Source of the DNA: Macrostomum lignano
Lineage: Eukaryota
DNA: 37,112 nucleotides
Direction: 5' to 3'
Assembly (NCBI GenBank): GCA_002269645.1
Contig: NIVC01004718.1
Location: 1-37,112 of the forward strand
The notes beneath the pieces are model-generated. The model saw only the letters and a program-made list of their open reading frames with translations. It did not search any database and was not told the origin of the DNA. Position numbers and translations under genes: made by a program. This document shows positions 13,812 through 37,112 of the stretch, in pieces. Each line of letters starts with the position of its first letter. Position 1 is the first letter of the stretch.

Positions 13812-13836
13812 GATCGGACGCTTTTGTCACTCACAG

Positions 13837-14369: not shown

Positions 14370-14427
14370 GTGAGCTTTATTTGGGAGTCTTGCCTCTCTA
14401 TGCTAATCCCGCCTAATTCCAGTCGTT

Positions 14428-15564: not shown

Positions 15565-15659
15565 TCGGCTCTTGTTTCAAAAGATTGATTTTAAGCTGAT
15601 AAACGCTTAGATGAAAAAGTTTTCTTTCAACACGGCACTTTCTTAATCTGCTGCCGGAA

Positions 15660-17033: not shown

Positions 17034-17369
17034 ATGCATACCGTGCCTTTCAAAGATCTGTGAGCACAGATCTGTACTATATATACTACTAATTTATCAA
17101 AAGTAAGACACTATCGCTATTTTCTTCGATGAAATGTTAATTATTTTACTAATTGAAAAAGCATTTTATCGTATTAAAATTGTTCACTCAGCTACCTTAC
17201 AAGAATTGAAATAAAATTCATGCTTGAATACACCATACACATTTGCATGGTACGAGCAGTTGTAGATTATACACAAACTTGAACTAAATCTTCTTCATAT
17301 TTGTTTATAAGCCTTGCACACAGACATAAGGCCATTGACAGTGTCTTACAGGACTGTTGTATTACGGGC

Positions 17370-17830: not shown

Positions 17831-18317
17831 GATTACGCCGTGTAGATACAGATTCTGTCTCTATTTTAAAACAACTTGCAACCTATTTTCAAGGACTATA
17901 GCTACTGTACTCGGTAACCCTTTTAACTGAACCATTGGCTGCCCTAATTTTCTGTAGTTTTCGTCTGGGGAAATTCCACAACAAGCTCTAATAAGCTAGA
18001 TATCTAATCTATATTACTTATCTATACATATAGGCGCCTACCGAATACAGTATAAGGATTGCATTGATCTATCCGCAGGTATTCCGTAAGCTGCACATAG
18101 TTTGGATAAGCTATTCACATGATCAAAGGACTGTTGTTAGATAAATGGCACGCCATATCTACTACTAGTATCTGTCACGCAGCATGCTTTAGCACCTGTT
18201 GCTGCTTTTGCTACTGAGCACGCGTTTGCAGGACAGGACAGGCCTGGCTATCCGATTAACATAACAGCGAATAGAATTTATGGCCTGTGCTGCAGTGCGC
18301 AGCAGACCTTAGTTAGT

Positions 18318-18347
18318 GGGAGGGGCCTGCCGGGGTGGGCGGGCCTG
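18318..18347 (+). promoter_or_regulatory. GC-box-like cluster (GGGAGGGG, GGGGTGGGCGGG) about 270 bp upstream of the ATG at 18617
   Basis: Sp/KLF-type motifs in otherwise AT-richer DNA; their position upstream of a candidate start codon is the only support. Confidence 0.25.
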
Positions 18348-18616
18348 GTTCACAAGTCGCAGGTCAAATCTTCAAAAGAAAGATTCAAAACGAGTTTTAG
18401 TTCTATATGTATTACTGGAAAATTACTGGAACAGTATGCGCATGTACGCTGGACGTGTATGCATAAAAGCCTGTGCGCTAGCGCGCCTAGACTTACATAA
18501 TAAACAACTTGTAGCTGCTCTACTACATGTATTTGCTGCTATAATTCTCTATGCAAATTCAAATGCGAGACACTGCCGCCAGCTTCTCATTAGCGATACG
18601 CCGGCGCCACTCCACC

Positions 18617-18999
18617 ATGGAGACCGGCGTCGGGGTCGACCCGAACTCGAATTCCGTTCGCCGGATTTCGCGATTCCGGCCGGTCCGTTTCCAGGAATAC
18701 CGGATGCGCTGGGGCTGCGCTGCCGCCTCCGTGTGCGACCTGCACGTGCTGGTGCCGCAGAAACGGGTCGAAGGATTCCGCGAAAACCCGGGCCGGTTCG
18801 CTGACCGACCGTTGCCAAGCGACAGAGAACTAACTGTTATAGCCGCTGGTGGCATCGGCGAAGTCGGACGCGCCGGCCGGCCCGGCCACTCCGGCTGTTG
18901 CGCAGTTCAGCCGCTGCGCTGCGAGTGGCGTCGCGCCATTGGCGCCTGCGTTCACGTCGACCGTTGCCTGCACACCGGCAGTCGAAGGAGTCCGGTGGG
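18617..18999 (+). CDS. Putative exon 1 of an uncharacterised two-exon gene (Cys/His/Arg-rich N-terminal half)
   Basis: Perfect Kozak context CCACCATGG, about 75-80% GC at third codon positions, and donor GG|GTGAGA at 19000. Phase 2 is compatible with the acceptor at 19736. No family recognised. Confidence 0.42.
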
Positions 19000-19027
19000 G
19001 TGAGAGACGAAGCCAATAAAATGGGGG

Positions 19028-19667
19028 AGTCACGAGAGGGGCCAGAGAGTCACCGCTAGGGAGACCATTGAGTCACTGAAAAAGCCAGAGAGTCACTGGG
19101 AAGACCAGATAATCACTGGGAAGGCCATACATGTAGAGTCACTGAAAAAGCCAGTGGGTCATTGCAGATGCAAGAGAGTCACTGGGAAGGCCAGAGAGTC
19201 ACTGGGAAGGCCAGAGAGTCACTGGGAAGGCCAGAGAGTCACTGGGAAGGCAAGAGAGTCACTGGGAAGGCCAGAGAGTCACTGGGAAGGCCAGAGAGTC
19301 ACTGGGAAGGCCAGAGAGTCACTGGGAAGGCCAGAGAGTCACTGGGAAGACCAGATAATCACTGGGAAGCCCAGAGAGTCACTGGGAAGGCCAGAGAGTC
19401 ACTGGGAAGGCCAGAGAGTCACTGGGAAGGCCAGAGAGTCACTGGGAAGGCCAGAGAGTCACTGGGAAGGCCAGAGAGTCACTGGGAAGGCCAGAGAGTC
19501 ACTGGGAAGGCCAGAGAGTCACTGGGAAGGCCAGAGAGTCACTGGGAAGACCAGATAATCACTGGGAAGCCCAGAGAGTCACTGGGAAGCCCAGAGAGTC
19601 ACTGGGAAGCCCAGAGAGTCACTGGGAAGGCCAGAGAGTCATTGGGAAGGCCAGAGAGTCACTGAAA
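19028..19667. repeat. 20-bp minisatellite CACTGGGAAGGCCAGAGAGT, about 32 copies, degenerate at the left edge
   Basis: Tandem copies. The diagnostic variant pair (GACCAGATAAT + GCCCAGAGAGT) recurs 200 bp apart (19341 and 19541). Confidence 0.97.
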
Positions 19668-19736
19668 GACAAAATTAGCTGTCCATGGCCAAAGCGATTC
19701 GTCAAGAAACTCAAAGCTGTCAATCCTGCAATGCAG

Positions 19737-20376
19737 AGGTCGAACCCACCGGCTGCCCAGCGACACCGCCGGCTGGGCTCAGGAGCCGGCGACAGCTCCT
19801 ATCGACACTCGCCGCCGACTGCTGCATCCCCCGCCGGTGTCAGTCTACTGGTACCTGTCGCCGCCGCAGCTGGCCACCCCGCCGACAACTCCGGAGCTGT
19901 TGCCGCCTCTGTCCGCAAATGTCGCTTCCTCCGCGGCATCAACTAGCTCGTCGACGGCATCGTCTCAGTCGTCGGCAGTTTGTCTCCGGCCAATCGACGT
20001 CAAGGACTCGTTGACGACGGCCGCAGAGGCTACGACGGCAGTGACCACTGCGGCTGTCTCGTGCAGCTCAACCGACATGCTGCTCGGCCTCACGGCAACC
20101 GCTGCTTCGGTGACCGCTGCGAAATCTTTGGTCTGTCGGCAGCAGTCGGCTGTCGAGAGGCGCGTGGCCTCGGTGGTTGAGCAGCTGCAGGACGCCCTCC
20201 TGGCGGCGGTTCGTGCCGAGACAGAACCGCTGGAACGCCGCCTGCTGGAGCGGGAGGCCCAGCTGAAGCAGCTGCAGTCCGAGCTGGAGGCCAAGGACGC
20301 CAGGCTGCGGCACCTCACCGCGCTGCTGTCCTGCCGCCAGTGCAGGGACGATGCCGCCGGCAAGAACTCCGGATAA
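19737..20376 (+). CDS. Putative terminal exon: S/T/A/P-rich low-complexity region followed by a coiled coil / leucine-zipper-like helix and CxxC
   Basis: The frame is open from before 19737 to TAA at 20374-20376. Heptad pattern LERRLLEREAQLKQLQSELEAKDARLRHLTALL, GC3-rich codons, CAG acceptor at 19734-19736, and AATAAA at 20924-20929. Confidence 0.6.
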
Positions 20377-20471
20377 AGACTTAACTGTTCAATTCTGAAC
20401 CTGCACCATTTGCTATTCGGCTGTTCGATCATTATGAATTGTTGCCATCGACCACCGGTTAGCGAGAGGGA

Positions 20472-20735
20472 AGGGGAACAAAGACCTGAACCTTCTGAGC
20501 CATGGACCCTTAAGAGGAGCAGTTAGGGGGAACAAAGACTCGAATCAAGACTCAGCCATGGAACCTTAAGAGGAGCAGTTAGGGGGAACAAAGACCCGAA
20601 CCTTCTGAGCCACGGACCCTTAAGAGGAGCAGTTAAGGGGAACAAAGACCCGAATCAAGACTCAGCCATGGAACCTTAAGAGGAGCAGGAAGAGGAACTA
20701 AGACCCAAACTTAGACTGAGCCATGGACTACTAGG
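20472..20735. repeat. ~55-57 bp tandem repeat with alternating A/B variants (GGGGAACAAAGAC...GAGCCATGGA(C/A)CCTTAAGAGGAGCAGTTA), 4-5 copies
   Basis: Units start near 20474, 20526, 20581, 20637 and a degenerate one near 20692. They alternate between CCTTCTGAG and TCAAGACTCAG cores. Confidence 0.9.
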
Positions 20736-21057
20736 GAGCAAGTGGGCGGGCAGTTACAAAGACTCTTTTACACCGGTATTTTCTGGCACAAGTGTATGGA
20801 CTTATTCAGCTCAGGTGAATTGCGTAATCAAAAATTGAACTGACCCCGACAGATATTGCTTGGTCGCTTGGAGATCCTAGCCGATTAAAGTGTCCTTCTC
20901 ATCACAAACCATTTTTTGTTGTAAATAAATCATTTTATCACCGGTGCAAACGCTGCTTGCTGGTATTCAGCGTTTTTTGGATAAAGACCTAAAATTATCG
21001 AGTTGAAGATGTGCAGCTTGTGCATTGTTTCAAACATACTTTTGATTTTTACTAACT

Positions 21058-21541
21058 TCTACCCTGACCCAATCCCACACCTGACCCAATCCCACACCTG
21101 ACCCAATCCCACACCTGACCCAATCCCACACCTGACCCAATCCCACACCTGACCCAATCCCACACCTGACCCAATCCCACACCTGACCCAATCCCACACC
21201 TGACCCAATCCCACACCTGACCCAATCCCACACCTGACCCAATCCCACACCTGACCCAATCCCACACCTGACCCAATCCCACACCTGACCCAATCCCACA
21301 CATGCCCCAATCCCACACCTGACCCAATCCCACACCTGACCCAATCCCACACCTGACCCAATCCCACACCTGACCCAATCCCACACCTGACCCAATCCCA
21401 CACCTGACCCAATCCCACACCTGACCCAATCCCACACCTGACCCAATCCCACATCTGACCCAATCCCTCACCTGACCCAATCCCTCACCTGACCCAATCC
21501 CACACCTGACCCAATCCCTCACATGCCCCAATCCCACACCT
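21058..21541. repeat. 19-bp minisatellite CACCTGACCCAATCCCACA, about 25 copies, G-rich on the minus strand
   Basis: Tandem copies directly visible. Confidence 0.97.
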
Positions 21542-21967
21542 AATCAGACCTTACACATTAAATAGAAATTCCATACTTCTGCGAGGCTACTTGAAGTAGC
21601 ACAATTAGAAAAGTTAGACAAGCTTTCTTCTGACTTTGTCTTCGGTCATTGATCTGATTAAGAAGTTGCATCTCTTCTATGGCTATTGAATTATTAATAT
21701 TTTTGGATAATCTGTCTATGAGGCTATCGGCATTGATTCATCAGGAGGTCCATCTAGACAGGACAAAAAGCTGAGGACACGGTCGCGGCATTAGCATTGT
21801 GCTTGTCTACCGCCAAAGTAATCAGAGTTAGGCATCTGGGCGGTCGCCTCGAATGACTAATTTATTTGACTGAATTCAGTTTGGCATCCAATGGAAGACT
21901 GGACTCTCTTGTGGGAGTTTGTTGGAAACTATTTGGCTGTAGCATCGAGATCAGAAACTAGGAGGTG

Positions 21968-23897
21968 GCACAAAGGACCTAAATGGAAAGTTAGACAGCC
22001 CAGAGGACCTAAATAAGAAGTTAGACAGCCTATAGGACCTAAATGGGGACCGACAGCCCTAAAGACCTAAATAAAGGAGTTGTAGACAGCCCAAAGGATC
22101 TAAATGAGGAGTTATAGACAGCCCAAAGGACTTAAATGAGGAGTTATAGACAGCCAAAGGATCTAAATGGGGAGTTATAGACAGCCCAAAAGACCTAAAT
22201 GAGGAGTTATAGACAGCCCAAAAGACCTAAATGGGGAGTTATAGACAGCCCAAAAGACCTAAATGAGGAGTTATAGACAGCCCAAAAGACCTAAATGGGG
22301 AGTTATAGACAGCCCAAAAGACCTAAATAAAGGAGTTATAGACAGCCAAAGGATCTAAATGGGGAGTTATAGACAGCCCAAAATACCTAAATGAGGAGTT
22401 ATAGACAGCCCAAAAGACCTAAATGGGGAGTTATAGACAGCCCAAAATACCTAAATGAGGAGTTATAGACAGCCCAAAATACCTAAATGAGGAGTTATAG
22501 ACAGCCCAAAAGACCTAAATAAAGGAGTTATAGACAGCCCAAAGGACCTAATGAGGAGTTATAGACAGCCCAAAGGACCTAATGAGGAGTTATAGACAGC
22601 CCAAAAGACCTAAATAAAGGAGTTATAGACAGCCCAAAGGACCTAAATGAGGAGTTATAGACAGCCCAAAGGACCTAATGAGGAGTTATAGACAGCCCAA
22701 AAGACCTAAATAAAGGAGTTATAGACAGCCCAAAGGACCTAATGAGGAGTTATAGACAGCCCAAAGGACCTAATGAGGAGTTATAGACAGCCCAAAAGAC
22801 CTAAATAAAGGAGTTATAGACAGCCCAAAGGACCTAAATGAGGAGTTATAGACAGCCCAAAGGACCTAATGAGGAGTTATAGACAGCCCAAAAGACCTAA
22901 ATAAAGGAGTTATAGACAGCCAAAGGACCTAAATGAGGAGTTATAGACAGCCAAAGGACTTAAATGAGGAGTTATAGACAGCCCAAAAGACCTAAATAAA
23001 GGAGTTATAGACAGCCAAAGGATCTAAATGAGGAGTTCGACAGCCCAAAGGACCTAAATAAAGGAGTTATAGACAGCCCAAAATACCTAAATGAGGAGTT
23101 ATAGACAGCCCAAAATACCTAAATGAGGAGTTATAGACAGCCCAAAAGACCTAAATAAAGGAGTTATAGACAGCCCAAAGGACCTAATGAGGAGTTATAG
23201 ACAGCCCAAAGGACCTAATGAGGAGTTATAGACAGCCCAAAAGACCTAAATAAAGGAGTTATAGACAGCCCAAAGGACCTAAATGAGGAGTTATAGACAG
23301 CCCAAAGGACCTAATGAGGAGTTATAGACAGCCCAAAAGACCTAAATAAAGGAGTTATAGACAGCCAAAGGACCTAAATGAGGAGTTATAGACAGCCAAA
23401 GGACTTAAATGAGGAGTTATAGACAGCCCAAAAGACCTAAATAAAGGAGTTATAGACAGCCAAAGGATCTAAATGAGGAGTTCGACAGCCCAAAGGACCT
23501 AAATAAAGGAGTTATAGACAGCCCAAAATACCTAAATGAGGAGTTATAGACAGCCCAAAGTACCTAAATGAGGAGTTATAGACAGCTCAAAGGACCTAAA
23601 TGAGGAGTTATAGACAGCCCAAAAGACCTAAATAAAGGAGTTATAGACAGCTCAAAGGAAGGCCCTAATGAGGAGTTAGACAGCTCAAAGGAAGGCCCTA
23701 ATGAGGAGTTCGACAGCTCAAAGGAAGGCCCTAATGAGGAGTTCGACAGCTCAAAGGAAGGCCCTAATGAGGAGTTAGACAGCTCAAAGGAAGGCCCTAA
23801 TGAGGAGTTAGACAACTCAAAGGAAGGCCCTAATGAGGAGTTAGACAACTCAAAGGAAGGCCCTAATGAGGAGTTAGACAGCTCAAAGGACCTAAGA
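21968..23897. repeat. 30-34 bp purine-rich minisatellite GAGGAGTTATAGACAGCCCAAAGGACCTAAAT, about 60 copies, ending in a block of a 33-bp variant (GACAGCTCAAAGGAAGGCCCTAATGAGGAGTTA)
   Basis: Tandem copies with a degenerate left edge and a distinct homogeneous variant block at about 23650-23880. Confidence 0.97.
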
Positions 23898-24150
23898 TAG
23901 AGTTGGAATTGGACCTTGGAGCTGAGAGCAAGGAAGGCCAATTGCTGAGCATTCCAATGCAACTGTTGCACAGTTAAGAGTAACCATAATACTCACTTAG
24001 ACTTGTTAAAAAATTTCCAGCATATCATCAATTATACTATTTGTATTTTAATAATGTGCGATTACTAATTTAATCATATTTTAATATAGCCGTTAGCACT
24101 ATTATTGCGATTACAATAGCAGAAATTTCGCATTTAGTAATTGAATTCAG

Positions 24151-25146
24151 TCAGCGCTGCCTGTGCACCTGGTGCAGCCGCATGTGCCTGTCCAAGTTGG
24201 CTCGCTGGCTGAAGCCTTGCAAGCAGGTCGGGCACTGGTGCGGCTTTTCGCCTCGGTGAATGTTGCGCAGATGGCGCTGCAGGTTGCTGCTGATGCTGAA
24301 GGCCCTGGCGCACAGGCTGCACTGGTAGGGCTGCTCACCAGTGTGCACCCGGAGGTGCCGGGTCAGGTTGGCCGATCTGGGGAAACTCTTGCCGCACCAC
24401 CGACAAGAATACTTGGACGCTGGCGATGAGCGGACGCCAGGGACATGTGGGGGCGGCGGCGGCGGCGGCGGCGGTGGCAGGTGCTGCTGCTGCTGCTGCT
24501 GTTTTTGCTGCTGCTGACGGTGCAGCAGCTGGTTCTGTAGAGCCTGATGATGATGATGATGAATCCGGCGATGCTGATGACCGCCACCGCCGCTGCTACG
24601 GTCGCGCAGCTGGGCGAGGCGGAGACGCTGCTGCAGCAGGCTGGGATCTCGGCTGGGAGCCAAGCGACCGCCTGACGACTGGGGCGGTGGCGGCGGCTGT
24701 GACGGCGGGTGAGCTGCGTTGAAGCCTCCGCAGCAGAGGAGTCGGCCGAATTCGCTGACTGCCGGTCGAATTCGCTGCTGATGCTCCAGTTCGCCAGTCG
24801 GTTTGCCAGCCAGAAGGGGCGGCTGAAGCGGCTGCGTAGGCGGCGGCGGCGGCGGCGGTGGCGGAAGTGGCGGCCGTGGAGGCGGCGGAAGCGGAGCGGC
24901 CAGCAGACGCCGCATCGCTGCGCCAAGAGCGAAGCGCCACGGGTCCCAGGAGGCTGCGGCTGCGGCGGCTGCGGCGGCTGCGAAGGCCGCGTTCGGAGCC
25001 GAAGGACGTTGCAGCCCAGCGGCTGACGGACTGCGCATGATGAGGCGTTCAATAGAATGATTGCTCAGCTTCCTGACCGGCTGCTGCTGAAGTCCTGCAG
25101 CAGCTTCGGCAGCGGCCTGCGATTGAGCAGCGGATGTTTCAATCAT
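24151..25146 (-). CDS. Prdm3/16: Prdm3/16 (Evi1/MECOM, PRDM16, hamlet, egl-43)-type C2H2 zinc-finger transcription factor, C-terminal three-finger cluster; single exon as modelled (331 aa from ATG 25146)
   Basis: [57 protein letters not shown]...NLDRH carries the family-diagnostic [10 protein letters not shown] / [10 protein letters not shown] / NLDRH recognition helices of Evi1 ZF8-10. The N-terminus is poly-A/P/Q/H. The start codon is uncertain. Confidence 0.88.
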
Positions 25147-28100
25147 TGAGTTTGGTTTAATGTGTTTTCTGCTGCCGGCTATCGCAGCATTCAAGGTCGG
25201 GGGGGGGGGTGCGGTGGTGAAGGTTTCTCCTGTCTGCGAGCTGTCAGTTTTATAACCAATGCTGGAAGCTATGGGTTTTAAATTACAGCAGGCAAAGGAT
25301 TATAACTGCAGCTCAACTTGTTAAAGGGAGAAGTTTGAATTCGAGAGAAAAAACTTGAAACTCTTGGAAAAGAAATTTTTCAAGCCCGATGGCCCGTTCT
25401 GGCTGAGCGAGGAGCAGCCATCTGCTGAGGATCCGTGCATATGGAAGATCTGACTTTTGCAAAGGTTGTAGGGGGGGTTCTTGAGTAATCCGATCTCATC
25501 TTCCCCAGTGCTAGCGAGGTGAGCAGTTAGTTACGGTGTCAAGTTTCACGGTGACGTTAGTAACGGGTTTTTTCATTCCGCAGCTGTATCAGCTGTATCG
25601 GAGTGGGCAAGCAATGCAGCTCCTACCTGAGTAGCCGGGTCCATCGCCAGATATTGTCAGTTCAGGTCTCAGGCAGAGAGCGCTCGTCGGTGTCGCATCA
25701 GTGAAATGGAGAGTCGGAGATCCGAAATCTCCCGTCCAGTTTATCCCGACTCGCCCCGGCTGGACAACTCCCCTTCCTCCTTTCCAGATGCGAATGGAAG
25801 AGGATCAAGAGAAAGTTGATTGAGGATGAGGGGAGATGAGGGAGATGAGGTGGAGAGCACGGATGAGCTCCCATTGGCTGGCCTGAGCTCCGCTTTGAGT
25901 TGCGTTGACTCTGCCCGCGCTTAGTCTGGAATGCCAGCCCCCCCCCCCCACAGCTGCCTCTCTTCACCCTGCCCCATCAGCAGGCACAGTCATGCGCCAT
26001 CTTCCGCCAACATGGCAGCATCTTCCCGTCGTTCCTGCGGCTCACACACACACACGCTCGCTAACACACACTCACACCTAGCGCCGCCGCCAGAGCTGCT
26101 CATGGCAGGGCCATTGTCATGCAAAACCTCGCTCTCAGCACCCGCATCCTGTCTGTTAGAAGCGGAACCTTATATTATTGCCCTAACACCAGTTCCCGTC
26201 TCGCGTATCAAAATTGCTTGGTGCTTTCTTTTGGCCAGCAAGCGCGCCGCCTGCCACTTTCCATAGGTGTAAAATCTATCTATCTTTCACACTGCGACCC
26301 ACCCCGCCACCAACCCCAAGCCAGTCACAATATACCGTCATTAGGGGGGAATTTAGACTTCCGGGGTCTGTTCTCAGCATCATCAGATGCCGATTATTTT
26401 CCTTTGATGATTGCAAGATTTCACGCGCAACCTAATGAATGCTATTGAAAAAAATTGTTGTGAGCAATCAGCTCATGCACTGCAGCAATCGGAGCTCACT
26501 GCTTGCTGGTAGATGAAATGAATCTGAGGCTTATAGGAGTGATGCATGCGGTTGACCCCAACGACATCTGGCCAAAGAGGCGAGCGGCAACATCGGATCC
26601 ACAGCCGCCGCCACCGCGGCCGCTGTTTGCGCTAGCCCTGACTGGCTGCGGAGATCAAAGTCAGCGCGCGGAGGGAAGTGGCCACTGGTCCAGGAAATTG
26701 CAAAGGAGATGAGCTTGAAGCGGTGCTCGAGTGTCCTCATTTCCTGGAGGAGGAGGGCGCCACGAGCTCTCCGGGGCTGATAGCAAACTTTGTGCATAAA
26801 GCGGCTGATCTGGACAAGAGAGAGAGAGAGAGTGATTGATGGAGGGCCGTGTTTCAGCTGTTGATGCTCTGGTCATGTTCCAGTTCTGGGCAAACACCCA
26901 GTATACCCCCAGAGCCATCAGTCTGTGGGGTGCCGCTCCCACCGCTTAGCAAAGTTGTGAGCACCAAGCGGCTTTCTTCCCCTCCCCGAGTCCCCTCTCT
27001 CGATCTCTCTCCCACTCTCCGACGCATATCTCATTTCGTGTGCCATCTCATTGAGCCCAGCAGCTCATTGCCAATGCGCTGCCCCCCAGGTCCTTCATCC
27101 GAGCACTTGTCATTCTGCTTTACTCTGCTTCTTATATCAACTATGTAGATCTAAGAACCGACTCTCTATACATCTGTCTCTTTATCTTCTCCTAGTAGAG
27201 CTCATTATTGTTCTCAACTGAGCGCATGCGTCAACAAGTCAATCCAGTTCTCTAAAGTTATTTCTCAACATCTTTAATATTCTTTTGTTTCACTCAGCCT
27301 GTCAAGACTTGGCGTGTCAATTGCCTATTTGACTTTTACTATTGAATTTTACTCTGCAACCCTGCATTGCAAGCCTCTCCCCGCTTGTTGACAGTCTTCC
27401 CGGTCTCAATACCCCCGGTAATCCTCATCGCCGTGTCTTCCTTGCAGCATCCAGCCCCCGATCCTTCCTACTCGCCTTCCTTCCTCCATCTCCGACGGCA
27501 CCTCCGATCTCAGTTTCACTGAAGGCGCGTCACTCAAAGTTTGCAGAAAGACATGATCTGACTGACTGACTGCGCGCCTCCCGCAGCTGTGGCACCTTCC
27601 CCCCTGGAATGGATCGACTCTCTCCCTGCTCTCCGATTTTCCCATTTTCCCATCCTTCATAACCAGTCCCGTCTCCGCTCTCTCTCTCTCTCGCTAATCA
27701 GCAGAAGCTCTGCAGAATGGGAAGAGGCGAGAGGTCGCGCTGCGAAGGATAGCCAGTTCCCAGCTTCAAGCGAGGAAGGTGCCACTCAGAGCAGCAGCTG
27801 GCGCCGCACCCAAACTTCCGCGGCGTCCGGAGAGTCGTCAAATGATGTGCGGCTGCGACCTAGCCGCGGGGCGGAGCTCTTGAAGAGGCTCTTGAAGTTG
27901 GCCAGTTACTGCTAGAGAGCCAGCGCAGTCCCCCATGGCTTCCCAGAATCTGCATGCTTATCCCTTTCTCTGCCGACCCCTTTCCCCCCCGAGGACGTCA
28001 ATAGCCAAGGCAAACACGGTGCGATCGAGCTAATTATGAAGCCTGCCGCATGATCCTTTAAATAATTGAAAAATTGGGGAGAATTCTCCCATCTCCAAAC

Positions 28101-28484
28101 CGTTTTGGAGTATATCGATGAGGCCCCGAGTTGAGTTTCACTGAGCAAACCACCTCCCCCTCCCTACGGCTTTCTCTCGTCGCTACCTCATCTTCGTTTT
28201 GGTGGGTGTCTTCCAAAATGACCTTTGTAAAATGTATTTAGCTACGAAAAAAGAACTCCTGACATTGTTTAACGGATTTCGCATCGAATACGCGGAATGG
28301 AAAATAACGCAGATTTCTATGCGATCCGAGCGTTCAATCAGTAGTTATTTGTATTTGCATGAGTTTTATAAATAGACTGTGTCGCAGCCAGTGTTGGAAC
28401 CCTGCATACATGCAGGACTCTGTCTGGTTAGCAGCTTGTAACAGTTTCTATGACAAGATGGGGGACACGCTGCAGTCGAGAGCA

Positions 28485-30866
28485 TCAGAGCAGTTGCAGC
28501 GGGTGCTCCTGACTGCCGGCGCGCACCGCGATGCCATCCAGGGCTGCGCCTTCTGGCGGAGCGAAGTAGCCGATGATCTTGTCGCGACTCGGATCGTAGG
28601 AGCTGCACAGAACCGTGCCGACCGCTTCGCCGTTGCGGAAGAGCGGCTCGCCGCCCCAGATCCAGTAGTCGCTGGCCGGATTGAGGCTGGGCAGGGCGAA
28701 CTTGCCCAAGTTGGCCAGCTGGCGGGGGCTCAGGCGGCAATGGAAATCCTCGGCAAACTCCGGACGGCGTTCGCTCAGCCGGAACATCCGCATAGCGTAG
28801 TAGCCGATCGGGACGAAGCCCTGGGCGTGGTTCAGATAGCGAAACACTGACGGAGCGTTGCCGGCCTGGGCCAGGACGAATACGTCCGTCTCGTCAGCGA
28901 AGGTGAACGGATCCGAGGGTAGTCGCGGGAATTCGCCGTAGTGAACGGCCCGGGGCAGGTGCAACAGGCAGTAGTTGATGCTGATGTCCGTGATGGCCAC
29001 AGTTTCGTCTGCCGCCTTCTCGTTCAAGAGGGAGACGGCGCGCGTCTGAGCGACTCCGGACGAAAGAAAGATTGCCGAGCGTTCCGTCTGTTTGACAAGA
29101 CGGCCGAAGAGTTCAAGGGACTGGCCGTCCCTGGACGACATGGTGACGAAGTCTCCGGATGGCAGGCGCGACAAGCCGGACTCGAAGCGTGTACGGTTGA
29201 ACACGGACGACAGGAAAGCCTCCAGATCGTCTGGCGTGTGTGCCGTGATGCGGATCTGCGTAGCCGAGCTGTTGTCGTAGATGGTCTTCATCCGCTGGAT
29301 CTTGCGGTACTCAGCCGAGGCGAAGTCGATCCAGAACGGCCGGCCGTACGAGCGCCAGCTGGCCTGCATCTGGTTTTGGGACTGCGGATGGTCGTAAAAC
29401 ACCGGGTGCTCGTAGCCGTTCTGCGTCTGCTCCAGCACAGCCCCGTGCTCCCTTTGCGCCTCGTGCAGCGCGGAGACAATCAGCTGGCGGCCTGTGTTGA
29501 ACTGGTTCTTCGGCCCAGGGTTGATCAGCGCGTTGTACGACTCGGGCAGTCGGTTGACGATGAAAGCCGGATGGTCCGTGTGCTGCGGCACGAACCGGCG
29601 AACGTCGATTGAAGTTGTGTCGACTTGAGTCTTTCCGTTCATCACCAGCTCAGCCATGGAGGCGCCCAGACCGCCGGACAGGCTGATGCCGACCGAGTTG
29701 AGCCCGGCCGCCACAAAATAGCCAGGTATGTCGGGCACCTCGCCGAAGATTGGTTGAGCATCCGGCGTGAACGTCTCGGGTCCGTTGATGCTGGATCGGA
29801 CCCCGAGCTTCGATAGCATCGGAAATCGATGGTTGGCGCCGCGGACAATTGGCTCGAACTGTTTGTTGTCCTCTGGTAGCAGTTGGTTCTCGAAGTTCGG
29901 CGGTACGCCAGTTGGAAACACAACTTTGCCTGTCGGCTCGAATCCACCAACGCACAGGCCGCCTTGCCATTCGCGAACGTAGAATAGGCGTTCGTTGTTC
30001 CGCACCACTGGGAAGGCCTTAGTGATGGAATCGTCCTCAGCCGGCTGGGTGAACATGGCGAAGTGCTCGCAGCTGCCCAGTGGAATTCGAACTCGCTCGG
30101 TGCAGCGCCTGCCCAGCTGCCGAGCCCACTGGCCGGCCGCATTGACGAACGCCTCGCACTCGATGAGGCCCTTCGGCGTCTCAACCGAGGCGACGCGGCC
30201 GTCCATGTTGAGGTGAACGCGACGGACGTGGGTGCCCAGTCGAATTTCGGCTCCTTTGGCCTTGGCCGCAGACAGGTAGGCGTTGGTCAGGTCCATCGGG
30301 CTGCTCAGGGCGCCGTCGCTTGGCGTGTACAGAGCACCGATAAGATCGTCCGTGAGCATCAGCGACGAAGGCACGAGTCGCTGGATCTCGCTTGGACCCA
30401 GCAGGTGGCTCTCAATTTTGTGCGCGTCGCCCATCGCCTTGAGCCGCTCGAGCGAGTGCATCGTTGCCGAGCTCTCGGCCAACGACAGGCTGCCGTAGTT
30501 CACAAAGCCGGACGGGAAGCCCTTGTCGTCCAGCTGTTTGCAGGTTTGCACCGTCTGTTTGGCCAGCTGGGTAAGAGCTTCGAACTGGCGCAGCTGGGAG
30601 ATCAGGCCGACCGAATGCCAAGTGGTGCCGCAGCCAACGCTGGCGCCCTGCTCAAGCAGGAGCACACTCTTGCAGCCCAGCTCGGTCAGGTGGTAGGCGA
30701 TAGAACAGCCTGTGACGCCGGCTCCGCAGACCACCACCTGAGCCGAGTCAATAACTGACAGGCTTGGCTCAGCCGGCCTGCTGCCGACGAAGCGAGCCTG
30801 AGAGGTCACCGCGGACCATCGCCGAGCTGCTGGTGGCAGCCGACGGCTGCAGATTGCGCGCAGCAT
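28485..30866 (-). CDS. PDPR: Mitochondrial FAD-dependent oxidoreductase of the PDPR/SARDH/DMGDH family, best fit pyruvate dehydrogenase phosphatase regulatory subunit; intronless, 793 aa
   Basis: Arg-rich transit-peptide-like N-terminus; VVVCGAGVTGCSIAYHL...LLEQG (GxGxxG FAD fold); GTTWH; IPLGSCEHF; VREWQGGLCVGGFEP; NGPETFTPD; YFVAAGLNSVG; WIWGGEP. CEHF, WQGG, PETFTPD and LLEQG favour PDPR over SARDH/DMGDH. Confidence 0.85.
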   Translation of the reverse strand: MLRAICSRRLPPAARRWSAVTSQARFVGSRPAEPSLSVIDSAQVVVCGAGVTGCSIAYHLTELGCKSVLLLEQGASVGCGTTWHSVGLISQLRQFEALTQLAKQTVQTCKQLDDKGFPSGFVNYGSLSLAESSATMHSLERLKAMGDAHKIESHLLGPSEIQRLVPSSLMLTDDLIGALYTPSDGALSSPMDLTNAYLSAAKAKGAEIRLGTHVRRVHLNMDGRVASVETPKGLIECEAFVNAAGQWARQLGRRCTERVRIPLGSCEHFAMFTQPAEDDSITKAFPVVRNNERLFYVREWQGGLCVGGFEPTGKVVFPTGVPPNFENQLLPEDNKQFEPIVRGANHRFPMLSKLGVRSSINGPETFTPDAQPIFGEVPDIPGYFVAAGLNSVGISLSGGLGASMAELVMNGKTQVDTTSIDVRRFVPQHTDHPAFIVNRLPESYNALINPGPKNQFNTGRQLIVSALHEAQREHGAVLEQTQNGYEHPVFYDHPQSQNQMQASWRSYGRPFWIDFASAEYRKIQRMKTIYDNSSATQIRITAHTPDDLEAFLSSVFNRTRFESGLSRLPSGDFVTMSSRDGQSLELFGRLVKQTERSAIFLSSGVAQTRAVSLLNEKAADETVAITDISINYCLLHLPRAVHYGEFPRLPSDPFTFADETDVFVLAQAGNAPSVFRYLNHAQGFVPIGYYAMRMFRLSERRPEFAEDFHCRLSPRQLANLGKFALPSLNPASDYWIWGGEPLFRNGEAVGTVLCSSYDPSRDKIIGYFAPPEGAALDGIAVRAGSQEHPLQLL

Positions 30867-31451
30867 CTTTCGATTTCAAGTAGCTTGTACTACCGAGCGC
30901 GATTCGTACGTCCGTCTTCGTTTGGTGTTGCAGATTTTGGCTGGACCCAATCAAGCGCTGCAATCTGTCAATGGTTAGATAGAGGTAGACAGGCCGGGTT
31001 GGTTGCAGGTTATCTATAAAAAGAAAAGTCACGAGCTCTTTGCTTGGCTATCAGTAGAGTAAAATTCCACTAAGAATTTTGTATTTCCTAAGAATGTAAC
31101 GTTGAATTTCCTTACATGGTCAGTAAATAACAAGAAAATGGTATAGTTATTGTCTTTCTAGTAAGTACACAAACATGCGACGTTAGCTTGGCAAATTAAA
31201 TTAAATGCTGGTTAAATACACTGAAACATCTTACAAGCACAGGACCTCGGCTTAATTATCCATAATTTTCTTGTTTTAATTTTAAAGGTAAGTACAATGT
31301 CCCCATTAGCGCGAATTCGAATTTCATTTAATTTACCGAATGTAAACTTAAGGGTGATTAATGTGGCTGAGATTGAAATGTTTTACGCTCGTAAGACTTA
31401 GATTTTAAAGAATCAGCCTACAGCCACTCACTCCAATTCATTGTTCAAAAA

Positions 31452-32401
31452 GATGGATCTAACAGATGTATCTAACAGATCTAACAGATCGATCTAGCAG
31501 ACAAATCTAGCATATATATCTAACAGATAGACCTAACATATATCTAACAGATAGACCTAACATATATCTAACAGATAGACCTAACATATATCTAACAGAT
31601 AGACCCAACGTATATCTAACAGATAGACCTAACATATATCTAACAGATAGATCTAACAGATATCTAACAGATAGACGACAGATGGATTTACCAGATGGAT
31701 CTACCGATGAATCCAACAGATAGATCCAACGGATAGATCCAACAGACAGATCCAACAGACAGATCCAACAGATAGATCCAACAGACAGATCCAACGATAG
31801 ATCCAACAGATAGATCCAACAGAAAGATCCAACGGATAGATCCAACGGATAGATCCAACAGATAGATCCAACAGACAGATCCAACAGATAGATCCAACAG
31901 ACAGATCCAACGGATAGATCCAACAGATAGATCCAACAGAAAGATCCAACGGATAGATCCAACGGATAGATCCAACAGATAGATCCAACAGATAGATCCA
32001 ACAGATAGATCCAACAGATAGATCCAACAGACAGATCCAACGGATAGATCCAACAGATAGATCCAACAGAAAGATCCAACGGATAGATCCAACGATAGAT
32101 CCAACAGATAGATCCAACAGACAGATCCAACAGATAGATCCAACAGACAGATCCAACGGATAGATCCAACAGATAGATCCAACAGAAAGATCCAACGGAT
32201 AGATCCAACGGATAGATCCAACAGATAGATCCAACAGATAGATCCAACAGATAGATCCAACAGATAGATCCAACAGAAAGATCCAACAGACAGATCCAAC
32301 AGATAGATCCAACAGATAGATCCAACAGATAGATCCAACAGACAGATCCAACAGACAGATCCAACAGATAGATCCAACGGATAGATCTAACAGATCCAAC
32401 A
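31452..32401. repeat. 13-bp minisatellite AGATAGATCCAAC (about 55 copies, 31690-32400) preceded by five copies of a related 24-bp dimer (CATATATCTAACAGATAGACCTAA)
   Basis: Tandem copies. The variant pattern AGAAAG-CGGAT-CGGAT recurs at roughly 117-130 bp spacing. Confidence 0.96.
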
Positions 32402-34844
32402 GGTCTACAAATAAATTTGAATTAAGTCGAGTTTTCTATATCAAATGGAAACTCTCGCAATAAATCTTGATGAAGGGGCGCCTCGTGGTCCAAAGTGGCT
32501 TGTTAATACGCTCGTGTTCATATTTTTCATAAATTACAATCGTACGATTGGGTTTTTGGCTAAATTATCCATACCCGCGTGCACACCAAGCCAATTTCAA
32601 GAAAGCACTTACCAAATAAATGCGAAAGCAAATGCCGATTGTTGTCGTGAAAAAACGAAATAATGTAAGCTTTTATCGCTGCGATTAGGCAAGAAAACTA
32701 ACGTTAGCATAACATACTGTATGAGATTGACCATTTATAAAATAGCTGCAGTTGACAGTCCGCGGCCTTATCAAATGCTACTGCGAAAGAATTTCTGTAG
32801 TGCCTGTCCTAGCTCTGCCGACTCGACCGCGTGTACACCGGAGCTGTACAGCTTTTGTAGGCTGTACAAAAATGTTAACTCTTATAGTTGCGCTCATGCA
32901 ACTACACAAGCGCATGCAGTGTGCGCTGCAGTGCAGGGGGTGTGTTCGTGCAATATATCCTAGCTCATAGATTGTTGCACACTGCTGCATGGGTAGGAAT
33001 GAATAATTGGCTTGAAGTTTCAGTTTATTGGGAGAGAGAGCCAAGCTGTGCACAGTAAAAACCAAATTTTAGCTGTATACCCTCACGCCTCTCATGTGAC
33101 TTGATCGAGGTGGGGGGGGGGCAAAACCAGATCTTCTCGACTAGATTTCAACGTGCAGGACTGTGTATATATTTAGACTTTCTTTTAACCACTAATTTCA
33201 GGAAAACTGGATAAGAAAGTTACAGTAGGTTTTAAAGCAAACTTTGATCTTCTTTCAAATTGTAAACTTGTGTTGAGCCTGAAGCAAAAAATCGCGTTAA
33301 GAAGTACACATTCAGTAGCCCTTGGAGAATTGGGCCGCGGGCATGTGGGGACCTTTTGAGAGGACTAGGAAAGGTTATTCTGGCCGAAAAACAATCTAGG
33401 CCGATCAGGCGCGTAGTCAGAATTTTGATTGGAAGGGTTCACATCTTTGGGAAGGCGCAACCCATTCGCCGCGCGGGTGCCATCTTGATCGAGAGAGTAG
33501 CTAATTTAATTACATGTACATGTATGTCAGAGATCAATAAACAGACCAGATATACAGTACTAAAAGATCGATGAATATTCTCTACTTACTTCCAATAAAA
33601 AACTATGATGTGTTACCACTCTAAAAATTTCCTAGATATCTCCATAGTGTTTATTTTTCGCAAGCCGGCCATGCTTCATCATCCCTTCGATTTTTCTATA
33701 TTAAGAAACCAGAATTTTCGGAATGATGTTAGTTCAGTTCAGTCGTCCTTATTTTTCAAAGTTAACTGGCTAGTCGGTCAGGTTATCTATTAATGCAAAA
33801 CAGTATTTTTACTTATGTTGTACAATATCTTGTTAAAGCTTGTAAAAGAAAAGGGATCAATTGTGATGGGACACGCAATGCGCAGATCCAGAAATTTTTA
33901 TGCTTGCAACCTGTACTAAGCTTATTCCTAACTAGTACAAGGTCAAAAAATCCATTAGGATCCGTCAATAACAAGACGCATGTGGCACACGAGTCACATG
34001 AATTGCATGGCAACATGTACGACGACAGCTACATATACCGGTGATTCGTAAGGGTAGAATTTTGATTTAAAAATTTATCAAAAAAGTCACGCACAACTAA
34101 CTTAAATATAAATGTATAAGTAATTATTTTGTCAGCTTAAAAATTCATTATGACAAAACACTTTGTTCAACTTTGCATGTTGACGTTAATTAAATTTATT
34201 GTTCTTAAATCTCGTCGACGTATAAATAATATAGTACCACGTATAATGTATCATATAACTAACTCATTTATGAGTCGTAGTAGCTAGTAAGCTAGTCAGG
34301 TATAGCTGTGTATCACAGGGCCTAGGAAGTAACGATTTAAAATACCGGCACGACCGGCACTCATTGACTCCTTTTTCTAGCAAAAAAGGAAATAATCAGT
34401 ACTTCTAACGATTACACAGGCGTAACGATTACACGACCACACAGGCCTGTCTATAACAGCACTGTCAGCAGTTTGCAGCATTGACCAGGAGGGGCGGGAC
34501 CCTGCGCACCAGGTATTGATATAACTCCCTAGCGTACACTGTAGAGTGGTATAGTCTGATTTTTGCATCAGTGCAAAAAGTTTTGCATGCATCCTTGAAA
34601 GTTAAATTAGGCAATCTTTTTAACAAGAAGTAGGCCTAACATTTTTCTAAGCTAGGCTGCTCAGTGTAGATTGTGGAATACTAAATAGATTACCATTCAG
34701 TTCAGTATATCTAAATATTTAATATTCAAATTAAAATATTAATGCTGTATAAGTATAACTATTAGAATGTCAAAACTTATGCTTAAATAAATCATTTTAA
34801 ATGTCCTTGACCTTTGTGTGCTAATGGTGTTTCCTGTACACTGA

Positions 34845-35033
34845 GAATCCCATTGCTGCCACCAAAAGCTATAACAGGGGTGATTCTTCCTTCTTAATAA
34901 TATCCCATTGTTGTTACCAAAAGCTGTCCCAGGGCTCTTAATTATTATTTTGTTTAGCCTTACTAGCTGCCACCAAGTTGTCAAAGGCTAAACTTCTTCT
35001 TACACTAATCTTTTAAGTTGGTAGCTGCCACCA
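34845..35033 (-). other. Four tRNA-Leu-3'-end-complementary (primer-binding-site-like) motifs at 55-58 bp period
   Basis: Minus-strand cores: TGGTGGCAGCTACC (35033), TGGTGGCAGCTA (34975), TGGTAACAACAATGGGAT (34919) and TGGTGGCAGCAATGGGATTC (34864). Metazoan tRNA-Leu(AAG/TAG) ends ...GAATCCCACCGCTGCCACCA. Confidence 0.6.
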
Positions 35034-35551
35034 GGATTATCCTATTAATAAATTATGAGTTTATCAATCTTAGATTAGAATAATTTGAGAAATGTTTCTT
35101 AGGCCTAGAATTGATCTGAGTATGTATCTTAGTATTTAGTCTAAGTATTTAGTCTGAGTATTTAGTCTGAGTATTTATCTGAGTATATTGTTCTTAGAAT
35201 ATTATTTAGCCCTTACAATTGTTATCGTTCTCTTGTTATTCTAGTAGCGTTTACTATTGTTCTGGTAGCATTTATTGTTATTCTAGCCTGAGTGGTCTAT
35301 TGGCTATATTGGTATATGTATTTCATGTACTTTGCAAGTCCTTGGGCATTACCGAGATCAGAGGGTCATAGCCTCCGGTTATTCTTACACTTATTACTTT
35401 AGAAATACTTTGTATTCTCTTACTACTCAATACTGCTACTTCTCAATAGTATGTACTGTATATGCCTCAGTCTATCTCGCTCTTATGTCTGCAAATGAAT
35501 AACTTAGAAAACGGCTCCTCTTATATTTATTCGTAACATTCCTTTCTTTCT
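35034..35551 (-). mobile_element. Possible LTR-like relic upstream (minus strand) of the PBS-like array
   Basis: The minus strand reads purine tract AGAAAGAAAGGAA, then TGTTACG (35538), then an A-rich segment with AATAAA and short internal repeats. No second LTR copy, no clear CA terminus next to the first PBS, and no gag/pol are seen. Confidence 0.3.
35131..35186. repeat. Short 13-bp tandem repeat AGTATTTAGTCTG, about 4 copies
   Basis: Directly visible. Confidence 0.9.
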
Positions 35552-36153
35552 ATGCTTACTCCTTTCATAGGAACTGCACAAAAGCAAGTTGCTCTCTCTT
35601 TGGCCCAGATTGTGTCTATTTATACTAAATTATTCCGTAGTTTTAAACAAAAATTAATTTGCAAAAATATTTTGGAAAACATGTACATTATAACAAATCG
35701 TTTGCTTAGTATTTTGGCACAAATTTAAAAGGATCAAATCGTAAAAATATAGATCACCCTGCACAACCTACCTCCCCTAAAAAGAAATTTGTGAACAAAG
35801 GTGCTATAACTAGTGCTCTGAGTGAACAAATTTCAAAATGCAACAAAAGTGTGGAGTGCAAAGTGCAAGAACAGTACAATGCAAAATTTTTAAAGCACTA
35901 CTAAATGATATATGTAAAACTATTATAACAGAACAAAGCATTATTCAATAATAAGCAAACAAATTTTGGTAAAAGTAAAACCTCAAAAAATAATAGCGCT
36001 AAATGACAACATATAAAAGCTTGCAGGAAAAACAGCACTAAAGTTCATAAAGGTTTAAAAATGACATGGATCAGGCAAGTCACAAAAATATGGCCAACCG
36101 ATTAGTCCGAAAAGCTAGCGCAGCTTGATGTTCAGGAGTCGATGCTGTACCGC

Positions 36154-37112
36154 TTAAGAGTCGGCTTGCATGATACGCCGCAGCTCCTCAGTGATGTATT
36201 GCAGCATGGCCTTGACAGAATCAACCGGAATAAATGCCAAAGCAGAGAAGCAGCAACATGCTTGGGCGCAACCTAGGGATTCACCCGGCCGTTTCTATTG
36301 GCAACACACACATGTAAGTCACTATTGGACGGAATAGTAGTCACGTGACTGCTCTCAGCCAATAGCGACTTACATGTGTGTGTTGCCAATAGAAACGGCC
36401 GAGTGATTCCCAAGGTTGCGCATGTATGAGCAGCAAAGCCACACTGAGAGCATGCCATCCTCAGCCTCAACTTGGCGCTTGAGTCCATTGGTGATGGCAT
36501 GTCCATATACACTTTGCACAGAAAGTGTGTACAGACATGTACAAAGTCACATATCCAGCGCTGGGGCTGTAAATTTGGTGCCAAAACTGTGAGCTGCTCG
36601 TATAAGCGATTGCAGACTGCTTGAGTCTTTGCTAGTAGCAGTGCATAAATTAATGGATGCACAAATCCATGAAGCTCAACATGGATGCTGACCAGTTGTG
36701 CAAATAATGGTGGAGAAGTATCAAAAGTGCCATCTGAATAAAATTGAGCAGCTGCCTGCAGCGCCAGCAAGTTCTTGTCGCTGCCAAAAATCAAAATTTG
36801 CATGTTTCCATGGCTGAAGTTGTCCAGTAGAAATCTTGACCCATTGTGTACTCAAAATTCATCAGGAACCACTAAATCGTTCAGATTGATCAGCTGTACA
36901 GGTAGTCCTTGGTGCACATAGCGCACATTCTGAACCATTCTCTTCAGCAAGTTCTGGCTAGGAAAGGCCACACCTGCTGCCTCAGGTAGACTGCTAGCGT
37001 GCTCCATGATTATCCTTGCAGTTGGGTCTTGGGTCTGCCTTGCATTGGTCTTCATGCCTTGGACGGCCTCCAGGATGCTGAAGCGTGAGCCAACTGCACC
37101 ATGGTTATGCTG
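36154..37112 (-). pseudogene. Degenerate Mutator-like (FLYWCH-MULE) transposase; continues beyond the right edge
   Basis: One frame reads HNH...FPSQNLLKRMV...DLVVPDEF*...RFLLD...ILIFGS...FYSDGTFDTSPPLFAQLVSIH...PLIYALL...WICDF, which includes the first two catalytic Asp motifs (DGTF, CDF). After a deletion/frameshift it continues QSVY...NGLK...CFSALAFIPVDSV. It has an in-frame TGA at 36852-36854 and a MITE insertion. Confidence 0.88.
36257..36428. mobile_element. 172-bp fold-back MITE with CAT...ATG termini and a perfect 8-bp TSD AGCAGCAA, inserted into the MULE transposase
   Basis: TSD at 36249-36256 and 36429-36436. Inverted arms 36266-36328 and 36359-36421 (63 bp, 4 mismatches). Removing the element plus one TSD restores the frame VWLCCFSALAFIP. 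Confidence 0.9.

What the first reader, a model, noticed from the sequence alone, without database searches (positions are those of the whole stretch)
34845..35033. Regularly spaced array of four tRNA-Leu primer-binding-site-like motifs with diverged spacers, several set in hairpins
Seen: GCTGCCACCA occurs three times, plus one decayed copy (GTTGTTACCA), ending at 34864, 34919, 34975 and 35033 (period 55/56/58 bp) in AT-rich DNA. The ~40-nt spacers share only faint similarity: on the minus strand a purine run (AAGAAG), then TG..CA-like TGACA/TGGGACA/TGTTATA just before the next TGG. The copy at 34964-34975 sits in the 22-nt loop of a perfect 10-bp stem (GTTTAGCCTT 34952-34961 / AAGGCTAAAC 34984-34993). 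The copy at 34845-34864 is enclosed by AGAATC/GATTCT. The copy at 35020-35033 reads GGTAGC-TGCCACCA, like the tRNA's 5' end fused to its 3' end. Known: metazoan tRNA-Leu(AAG/TAG) ends GAATCCCACCGCTGCCA-CCA, CCA is not normally encoded in eukaryotic tRNA genes, and LTR retroelements normally carry one PBS. In the two long copies all five differences from the canonical complement TGGTGGCAGCGGTGGGAT are G-to-A on the PBS strand. Inference: a conserved tRNA-complementary core in otherwise eroded units suggests selection. Candidates are a multi-PBS non-autonomous retroelement (collapsed PBS-PPT-LTR mini-units), a tRNA/3'-tRF sponge or target array, or the scar of repeated tRNA-primed cDNA capture with deaminase editing.
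Basis: partly seen in the sequence, partly recalled or inferred. Interest (0 to 1): 0.75.

Follow-up and report, generated by a model that had tools for sequence, protein, structure and literature searches.

The report
Decayed tandem repeat of tRNA-Leu primer-site-like motif
In non-coding DNA of the flatworm Macrostomum lignano, a short sequence that matches the site where a retrotransposon would bind tRNA-Leu has been copied four times in a row at 56-base spacing; it looks like a decaying leftover, not a working element.

Summary
GCTGCCACCA occurs exactly at 34855, 34966 and 35024, with a decayed copy at 34910. Spacing is 55/56/58 bp in AT-rich DNA. Chance expects 0.04 copies per window.

The window is a whole contig of Macrostomum lignano Mlig_3_7. 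Copies 1 and 2 are 18-mers of primer-binding-site (PBS) length. They match the CCA-bearing 3' end of tRNA-Leu(AAG/TAG) at 16/18 and 13/18, and that end is identical in human and planarian.

No part of a retroelement was found around the array:
- no LTR pair
- no gag or pol domains in any of six frames
- no tRNA gene and no Rfam family

The nearest mobile-element trace is a dead MULE transposase.

Four paralogous loci carry the array but form only two lineages, so they cannot test selection. Even spacing (P about 0.001) points to tandem duplication. A neutral-decay simulation reproduces an intact 10-mer beside unalignable spacers fairly often. The G-to-A bias follows from base composition.

A metagenome scan found three unrelated, younger arrays of the same 16-18-mer. 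Their units are 53-60 bp, a range the pattern itself fixed, and identity is 80-98%.

Verdict: a decaying PBS-like minisatellite. A function as a primer site or tRNA binder is not excluded but unsupported.

The parts
34845..34864 (-). Copy 1. On the - strand it is the PBS-like 18-mer TGGTGGCAGCAATGGGAT (34847-34864), plus 2 further tRNA-matching bases.
   Evidence: 18/20 to GAATCCCACCGCTGCCACCA. Identical in all four paralogous loci.
34902..34919 (-). Copy 2. A decayed 18-mer, ATCCCATTGTTGTTACCA on the + strand.
   Evidence: It lies in a 33-nt block (34902-34934) that is 82% identical to 34847-34879. The B-lineage paralogues read ATCCCACTGTTATTACCA, so this copy is drifting freely.
34964..34975 (-). 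Copy 3. The 12-mer TAGCTGCCACCA, of which 10 nt match the tRNA end.
   Evidence: The 8 bases upstream differ from copy 1 only by transitions plus a 1-nt gap (read).
35022..35033 (-). Copy 4. The 12-mer TAGCTGCCACCA, which is the last, partial unit of the array.
   Evidence: The downstream flank shows no similarity to the other spacers.
34952..34993 (.). A 10-bp inverted repeat, GTTTAGCCTT / AAGGCTAAAC, enclosing copy 3.
   Evidence: L004 has an extra G that makes a bulge, and L001/L003 carry a 7-nt duplication and an extra A in the loop. Roughly 1-4 such stems are expected by chance per window (my own calculation).
34847..35033 (-). The whole array: three full units of 55-58 bp and one partial unit. 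The inferred tree is ((1,2),(3,4)).
   Evidence: Spacing P = 0.0012. Copies 1 and 2 share 33 nt. Copies 3 and 4 share the derived TA before the core.
35115..35286 (.). Two neighbouring small tandem repeats (13-mer x 5.7 and 21-mer x 2.6), which show that local duplication is frequent here.
36273..37112 (-). A degenerate FLYWCH + MULE transposase pseudogene, the nearest mobile-element trace. It runs off the end of the contig.
   Evidence: Translation. Its only homologues carry PF10551 MULE. An in-frame stop is shared with L001.

Best explanation
The array is a relic. A short segment carried an 18-nt site complementary to the CCA-bearing 3' end of tRNA-Leu, the kind of primer-binding site that lies just inside the 5' LTR of an LTR retroelement. 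That segment was amplified in place by tandem duplication of a roughly 56-bp unit, through slippage or unequal exchange, in a genome that makes minisatellites very readily.

The order of events I infer is one old duplication, then one more recent duplication in each half, giving ((1,2),(3,4)). The array has since decayed by GC-to-AT transitions and small indels. I think it has no present function.

Shown: the motif copies, their even spacing, the tRNA-Leu match of PBS length, the absence of retroelement parts, presence of the array in four paralogous loci, and similar but younger arrays elsewhere. Inferred: origin from a retroelement PBS, the order of duplications, and neutrality.
For: - The motif is real and evenly spaced.
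- The tRNA match is 18/20 and stops at PBS length. Other tRNA parts are absent. No tRNA gene or Rfam family is found.
- A flatworm and human share exactly this tRNA end.
- M. lignano carries hundreds of Ty3/gypsy lineages (paper 10.1101/2024.12.18.629116).
- The window is packed with tandem arrays, two of them within 250 bp of this one.
- Copy 2 has lost 3 of 10 core bases and keeps changing between paralogues. The core is therefore not protected in every unit.
- A neutral simulation reproduces an intact 10-mer with undetectable spacer similarity at useful frequency.
- Three unrelated metagenome arrays carry the same 16-18-mer in 53-60-bp units at 98%, 97% and 80% identity. In them spacers and motif are equally conserved, so they are plain tandem repeats at earlier stages of decay.
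Against: - No LTR, gag or pol remnant ties the site to a retroelement.
- Between pairs (1,2) and (3,4) the spacers are at random-level identity, yet the 10-mer is perfect and unit length stayed within 3 bp. Substitutions alone would have destroyed the core, and many indels should have disturbed the spacing. My rough estimate is that the joint neutral outcome occurs at only a few per cent.
- The host's own tRNA-Leu and the genome-wide copy number could not be checked with these tools.
Confidence: 0.55

Rival explanations
1. The array works as a set of minimal primer-binding sites or tRNA/3'-tRF binding sites on a minus-strand transcript. It would be a non-autonomous retroelement or decoy, and selection would keep the 10 nt that pair with the primer's 3' end and also keep the spacing.
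For: - Three perfect 10-mers sit among spacers that no longer align.
- Spacing is kept at 55-58 bp.
- The conserved part pairs with the 3'-terminal bases of the tRNA. Priming needs that part, and Ty1 manages with a 10-nt PBS (my own knowledge).
- Unattached arrays of the same 16-18-mer recur in three unrelated eukaryotic contigs.
Against: - There are no LTRs, no PPT next to an LTR and no coding capacity.
- Folding is not better than shuffles.
- Copy 2 is decaying.
- In the L075 array the variable positions lie inside the PBS-like part while the spacers are invariant.
- The seed-matching part for a 3' tRF is eroded in copies 3 and 4.
- No gene is annotated over the array in any of the four loci.
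Confidence: 0.15
2. The motif has nothing to do with tRNA. It would be a cluster of protein-binding sites, either an enhancer or insulator upstream of the oxidoreductase gene, or subterminal transposase sites of the neighbouring MULE element.
For: - Short conserved motifs at regular spacing in AT-rich DNA, 4 kb upstream of a gene, look like this kind of cluster.
- The array lies downstream of a MULE transposase remnant.
Against: - Copies 1 and 2 match the tRNA-Leu end over 18-20 nt, with about 0.007 such matches expected per window.
- The same 16-18-mer occurs in independent arrays.
- No inverted copy of the motif lies on the other side of the transposase in L001.
- The related MULE contig L005 has no copy.
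Confidence: 0.1
3. Copies 3 and 4 and the 10-bp inverted repeat are short templated insertions made during error-prone break repair. They would have been copied from the nearby copy 1/2 sequence, so there never was a 56-bp unit spanning the whole array.
For: - Copies 3 and 4 share only 12 nt with each other and 10-11 nt with copy 1.
- A direct and an inverted micro-repeat lie within 200 bp.
- Indels dominate the differences between paralogues here.
Against: - Even spacing (P = 0.0012) is not expected from independent repair events.
- The 8 bases upstream of copy 3 differ from copy 1 only by transitions, which suggests that a longer tract was once homologous.
Confidence: 0.1

Closest known systems
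tRNA-Leu-type primer-binding site of LTR retrotransposons and endogenous retroviruses (the ERV-L class uses tRNA-Leu)
   Same: An 18-nt complement of the tRNA 3' end including CCA, beginning TGG. The match ends where reverse transcriptase stops copying the primer.
   Different: There are no flanking LTRs and no gag or pol. There are four copies in tandem instead of one, and two of them are cut down to 10-12 nt.
Terminal-repeat retrotransposons in miniature (TRIM) and other non-autonomous LTR elements
   Same: Short, non-coding, and carrying a PBS-like site and a purine run.
   Different: No terminal direct repeats were found. Units of 56 bp are far too short to hold an LTR. Genome-wide copy number is unknown.
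Minisatellites and satellites born from retrotransposon untranslated regions (described for plant Ty3/gypsy elements; my own knowledge)
   Same: Tandem amplification of a short stretch of retroelement-derived non-coding sequence. The younger analogues L101, L075 and L071 look like this.
   Different: Here the unit includes the PBS itself, and no parent element is attached in any of the four cases.
3' tRNA fragments that target PBS sequences of LTR retrotransposons (Schorn et al. 2017; my own knowledge)
   Same: The 18-nt tRF ATCCCACCGCTGCCACCA would pair with copies 1 and 2.
   Different: The conserved part of the array pairs with the tRF's 3' half, not its seed. There are no expression data.
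Subterminal transposase-binding repeats of DNA transposons (En/Spm, Ac, Mutator)
   Same: A short motif repeated several times within about 200 bp near a transposase gene.
   Different: No inverted counterpart was found at the other end, and the motif is absent from a related MULE copy.

Membership tests
LTR retrotransposon / TRIM | Two long terminal direct repeats flank the element | tested here: not met
   No direct repeat of 35034-35700 or of any flank was found in 24000-37112 or in the whole window at word size 7.
LTR retrotransposon / TRIM | A PBS complementary to a tRNA 3' end lies directly after the 5' LTR | tested here: inconclusive
   PBS-like 18-mers are present at 16/18 and 13/18, but there is no LTR for them to follow. 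The ...ACA plus 3-5 nt before the TGG in copies 2 and 3 (ATA in copy 1, none in copy 4) is only suggestive.
LTR retrotransposon (autonomous) | gag, protease, reverse transcriptase or integrase coding sequence | tested here: not met
   No Pfam retroelement domain at E <= 1 in six frames of 32400-37112.
LTR retrotransposon / TRIM | Dispersed copies with target-site duplications | not testable with these tools
   No DNA search of the M. lignano genome is on hand. The four loci found are segmental paralogues that share all flanks.
Tandem repeat (minisatellite) | Head-to-tail units of constant period | tested here: met
   Periods of 55/56/58 bp, P = 0.0012 for such evenness.
Tandem repeat (minisatellite) | Units are homologous over their whole length | tested here: inconclusive
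   Units 1 and 2 are homologous (33 nt at 82% plus a gapped remainder). Units 1/2 against unit 3 are not detectable. TRF reports nothing here. A simulation shows low power at this length.
tRNA gene, tRNA pseudogene or tRNA-derived SINE | A cloverleaf or at least the internal promoter half of the tRNA | tested here: not met
   ARAGORN finds none. Rfam finds none. The D-arm and T-arm probes are absent.
MULE terminal or subterminal repeats | The same motif in inverted orientation at the other end of the element | tested here: not met
   No copy within 2.1 kb upstream of the transposase start in L001, and none in the related contig L005. The true element ends are unknown.

The most novel reading that the evidence does not exclude
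Unattached tandem arrays of the tRNA-Leu primer-site 16-18-mer could be a recurrent class of element, not one-off debris. Units are 53-60 bp, and no LTRs or coding sequence were found. They were seen in M. lignano and in three unrelated eukaryotic metagenome contigs. They might be kept because they bind tRNA-Leu or its 3' fragments, or prime reverse transcription. Alternatively, the G-rich strand of this particular site may make it unusually prone to array formation.
Probability: 0.12. Interest if true: 0.65.

Novelty: new member of a known kind. Interest (0 to 1): 0.3.

Why it matters
As a relic it matters little. It is one more example of retroelement-like debris turned into a minisatellite in a repeat-rich flatworm genome. 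It also shows that a conserved-looking core in a four-unit array is weak evidence for selection.

The one point worth a specialist's time is the recurrence. Among roughly eleven non-coding tandem arrays that hold this 10-mer in public metagenomes, three carry the full tRNA-Leu-type 16-18-mer, and none was seen attached to a retroelement. L101 was checked with Pfam; L071 and L075 only by ORF listing and a motif regex.

If a genome-wide survey showed that primer-binding-site sequences seed tandem arrays more often than matched controls, two questions would open. One is how reverse transcription, or G-rich DNA, creates repeats. The other is whether such arrays titrate tRNA fragments that police retrotransposons.

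Tried and rejected
- **LTR pair.** Sought with the repeat finder and word-7 blastn. None found.
- **Coding remnants.** Six-frame Pfam on 32400-37112 gave none. The MULE remnant itself scores below Pfam's reach once stops are X-ed.
- **RNA genes.** ARAGORN and Rfam at both gathering and E <= 10 thresholds gave nothing.
- **MULE subterminal-repeat idea.** No inverted copies of the motif.
- **Sampling more of the M. lignano genome through the transposase.** This failed. Only 3 distant proteins are in the collection, because it holds NCBI-annotated proteins only for this assembly.
- **Paralogues as a test of selection.** The four loci collapse to two lineages, L001 = L003 and window about equal to L004, so there is no power.
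- **Literature.** Searches for multiple or tandem PBS and for the motif string returned only primers and unrelated uses. The supplement of the M. lignano LTR paper has no PBS data.
- **Similarity between L101 and the M. lignano units beyond the core.** A 13-nt match TGGGAYAGCTTTT, p = 0.07-0.11. GTTACAA lies before the PBS in L101 and in the B lineage (E = 0.1). Suggestive, but not significant.
- **Reverse transcriptase in the 119 metagenome loci.** A motif regex found none.
- **Deaminase-editing reading.** Rejected on base composition and on the plus-strand G-to-A change in copy 2 of the paralogues.

Full report
**Where the window comes from.** The 793-aa ORF at 28485-30866 (-) is found by exact look-up on NIVC01004718.1, a 37112-bp contig of assembly GCA_002269645.1. 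That assembly is Macrostomum lignano Mlig_3_7 (paper 10.1101/2024.12.18.629116; source names). The window is therefore a whole contig of a free-living flatworm. It is mostly tandem repeats: 12.7 kb of a 34-mer and at least seven further minisatellites. The finding lies in AT-rich intergenic DNA (GC 0.31-0.36). It sits 4 kb upstream of the oxidoreductase gene and downstream, on the minus strand, of a dead transposase.

**The observation.** GCTGCCACCA is exact at 34855, 34966 and 35024 on the + strand. One further copy lies inside the coding ORF. Shuffles expect 0.04 copies. The decayed copy GTTGTTACCA ends at 34919. Intervals of 55, 56 and 58 bp are far more even than random placement allows: 12 of 9870 arrangements, P = 0.0012. 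The 10-bp stem around copy 3 is real. No further copies, even with 3 mismatches, extend the array.

**The tRNA likeness.**
- The stretch 34845-34864 matches GAATCCCACCGCTGCCACCA at 18 of 20 bases, against an expectation of 0.00. After allowing for about 60 different tRNA ends, about 0.007 such matches are expected per window.
- The homology between copies 1 and 2 begins at ATCCCA, 18 nt from the end. That is the length of tRNA that reverse transcriptase copies (established knowledge).
- Probes for the D-arm and T-arm of tRNA-Leu find nothing. ARAGORN and Rfam find nothing. This is a primer-binding-site-type match, not a tRNA gene, pseudogene or SINE.
- I could not scan the host's tRNA genes. 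However, the human 3' fragments ATCCCACCGCTGCCACCA and TCGAATCCCACCGCTGCCACCA are on record (PMC12025293). The tRNA table of the planarian Schmidtea mediterranea has 12 entries ending GAATCCCACCGCTGCCA on a Leu(AAG/TAG)-type body; in the passages read they carry other anticodon labels (PMC7962491, supplementary file 8). A flatworm and a vertebrate thus share this end exactly.

**Anatomy of the array.**
- Copies 1 and 2 share a 33-nt block at 82% (34847-34879 and 34902-34934). The rest of their units aligns with one indel of about 9 nt.
- Copies 3 and 4 share TAGCTGCCACCA and little else. Copy 4 is the end of the array, because its downstream flank is unrelated to the spacers.
- The derived TA before the core unites copies 3 and 4, and AA unites copies 1 and 2. 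The tree is therefore ((1,2),(3,4)).
- The 8 bases before copy 3 differ from those before copy 1 only by transitions, once a 1-nt gap is allowed. This hints that copy 3 once held the full 18-mer.
- Outside these parts the spacers are not significantly similar.
- The region does not fold better than shuffled sequence on either strand.

**What is not there.** No LTR pair was found. No Pfam retroelement domain was found in any frame of 32400-37112. No gene is annotated over the array in any locus. The nearest mobile-element trace is a FLYWCH + MULE transposase pseudogene at 36273-37112 (-). Its only homologues carry PF10551. The motif is absent from the other side of that gene and from a related MULE contig.

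**Paralogues.** Cluster look-up gave two more proteins, and through them two more loci. Four loci hold the array: the window, L004 (99.4-99.9% identical to it), and L001 and L003 (identical to each other here and about 93-96% identical to the window). L001 and L004 lie inverted on one 462-kb contig. The three exact cores are kept in all four loci. With only two lineages and about 3% substitutions, however, one change was expected in the 30 core bases, so finding zero means nothing. Copy 2 does change (ATCCCACTGTTATTACCA in the B lineage). The stem gains a bulge in L004 and loop insertions in L001/L003.

**Is the core selected?** If substitutions alone had randomised the spacers, three perfect 10-mers would be impossible. 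If indels did it, the even spacing is somewhat surprising. A simulation of unit pairs at 57-68% identity with three indels keeps some 10-nt block intact in 11-30% of cases, and fails to detect spacer similarity in 40-67%. Adding the need to keep unit length within 3 bp, I put the neutral outcome at a few per cent. That is unusual, but not remarkable for a feature picked by eye from a repeat-rich window. Selection is neither shown nor excluded.

**The G-to-A claim.** All differences from the canonical site in the window are C-to-T on the + strand. That strand of the 18-mer has 10 C and 2 G, so five of five has P = 0.40. The B lineage also has a plus-strand G-to-A in copy 2. Ordinary GC-to-AT drift in AT-rich DNA is enough to explain this.

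**Related sequences elsewhere.**
- A scan of metagenome contigs for two cores 40-54 nt apart gave at least 119 loci.
- Of these, 43 are tandem repeats. Most have periods divisible by three and look like coding repeats.
- Among roughly eleven non-coding arrays, three carry much more than the 10-mer.
- L101 (marine, AT-rich) has 2.2 units of 60 bp at 98% identity, each with the exact TGGTGGCAGCGGTGGGAT.
- L075, which is the same sequence as L053, has 5 units of 53 bp at 97% identity, with 17/18 in the end units.
- L071 has 5.5 units of 55 bp at 80% identity, with 16/18.
- By chance, six further adjacent matches are expected in about 0.03 of 100 loci.
- No LTR-retrotransposon-type reverse-transcriptase motif appears in any of the 119 loci (regex). 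L071 and L075 show no plausible retroelement ORF. L101 has no retroelement domain in the 3 kb downstream and no LTR pair.
- In these younger arrays the motif and spacers are equally conserved. In L075 the variable sites lie inside the motif.
- They look like ordinary tandem repeats at earlier stages of the decay seen in M. lignano. The 53-60-bp period is set by my search pattern and carries no weight.

**Verdict.** The tRNA-Leu primer-site reading of the motif is well supported. The retroelement, sponge and editing readings are not. The best account is a PBS-like segment amplified by local tandem duplication and now decaying (confidence 0.55). A working primer-site or tRNA-binding array remains possible (0.15). 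The recurrence of unattached arrays of this site in unrelated genomes is the only part that may deserve follow-up.

Noticed in passing
window 1-12710: A 12.7-kb satellite of a 34-bp unit (384 copies, 95% matches) fills the first third of the contig. At least seven further minisatellites lie at 13021-23895, with periods of 17-56 bp (some also scored at 110 and 191).
   Followed up: no
window 28485-30866 (-); L001, L003, L004: An intronless, GC-rich (about 60%) 793-aa ORF with DAO, FAO_M and GCV_T domains. It is present in at least four paralogous copies. The L004 copy is frameshifted (525 aa). L001 and L004 form a large inverted duplication on one 462-kb contig.
   Followed up: partly
window 36257-36428: A 172-bp insertion relative to L001/L003, with 63-nt inverted arms (94% complementary). 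It is also present in L004. It looks like a miniature inverted-repeat element or a local foldback.
   Followed up: partly
window about 36210, against L001 3023-4427: The window and L004 lack about 1.4 kb that L001 and L003 have. That stretch holds the C-terminal part of the MULE transposase and a GC-rich repeat. The in-frame stop after PDEF is shared by both lineages, so the transposase died before they split.
   Followed up: partly
window 24151-25194 (-): An ORF ending in C2H2 zinc fingers of the PRDM/EVI1 kind ([15 protein letters not shown]), preceded by long Pro, Gln and Ala runs. It is probably one exon of a larger gene.
   Followed up: no
L101 815-943; L075 6647-6911 (same as L053); L071 5470-5790: Three unrelated metagenome contigs carry tandem arrays of 53-60-bp units, each holding the tRNA-Leu primer-site 16-18-mer. 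No LTRs or retroelement genes were found on the contigs.
   Followed up: partly
L005 1567-1715 against L001 1290-1329: A JGI metagenome contig (3300040801) holds a MULE copy 59% identical in protein. It carries the same short tandem repeat that lies upstream of the transposase in L001. A relative of this flatworm transposon is therefore present in an environmental sample.
   Followed up: no
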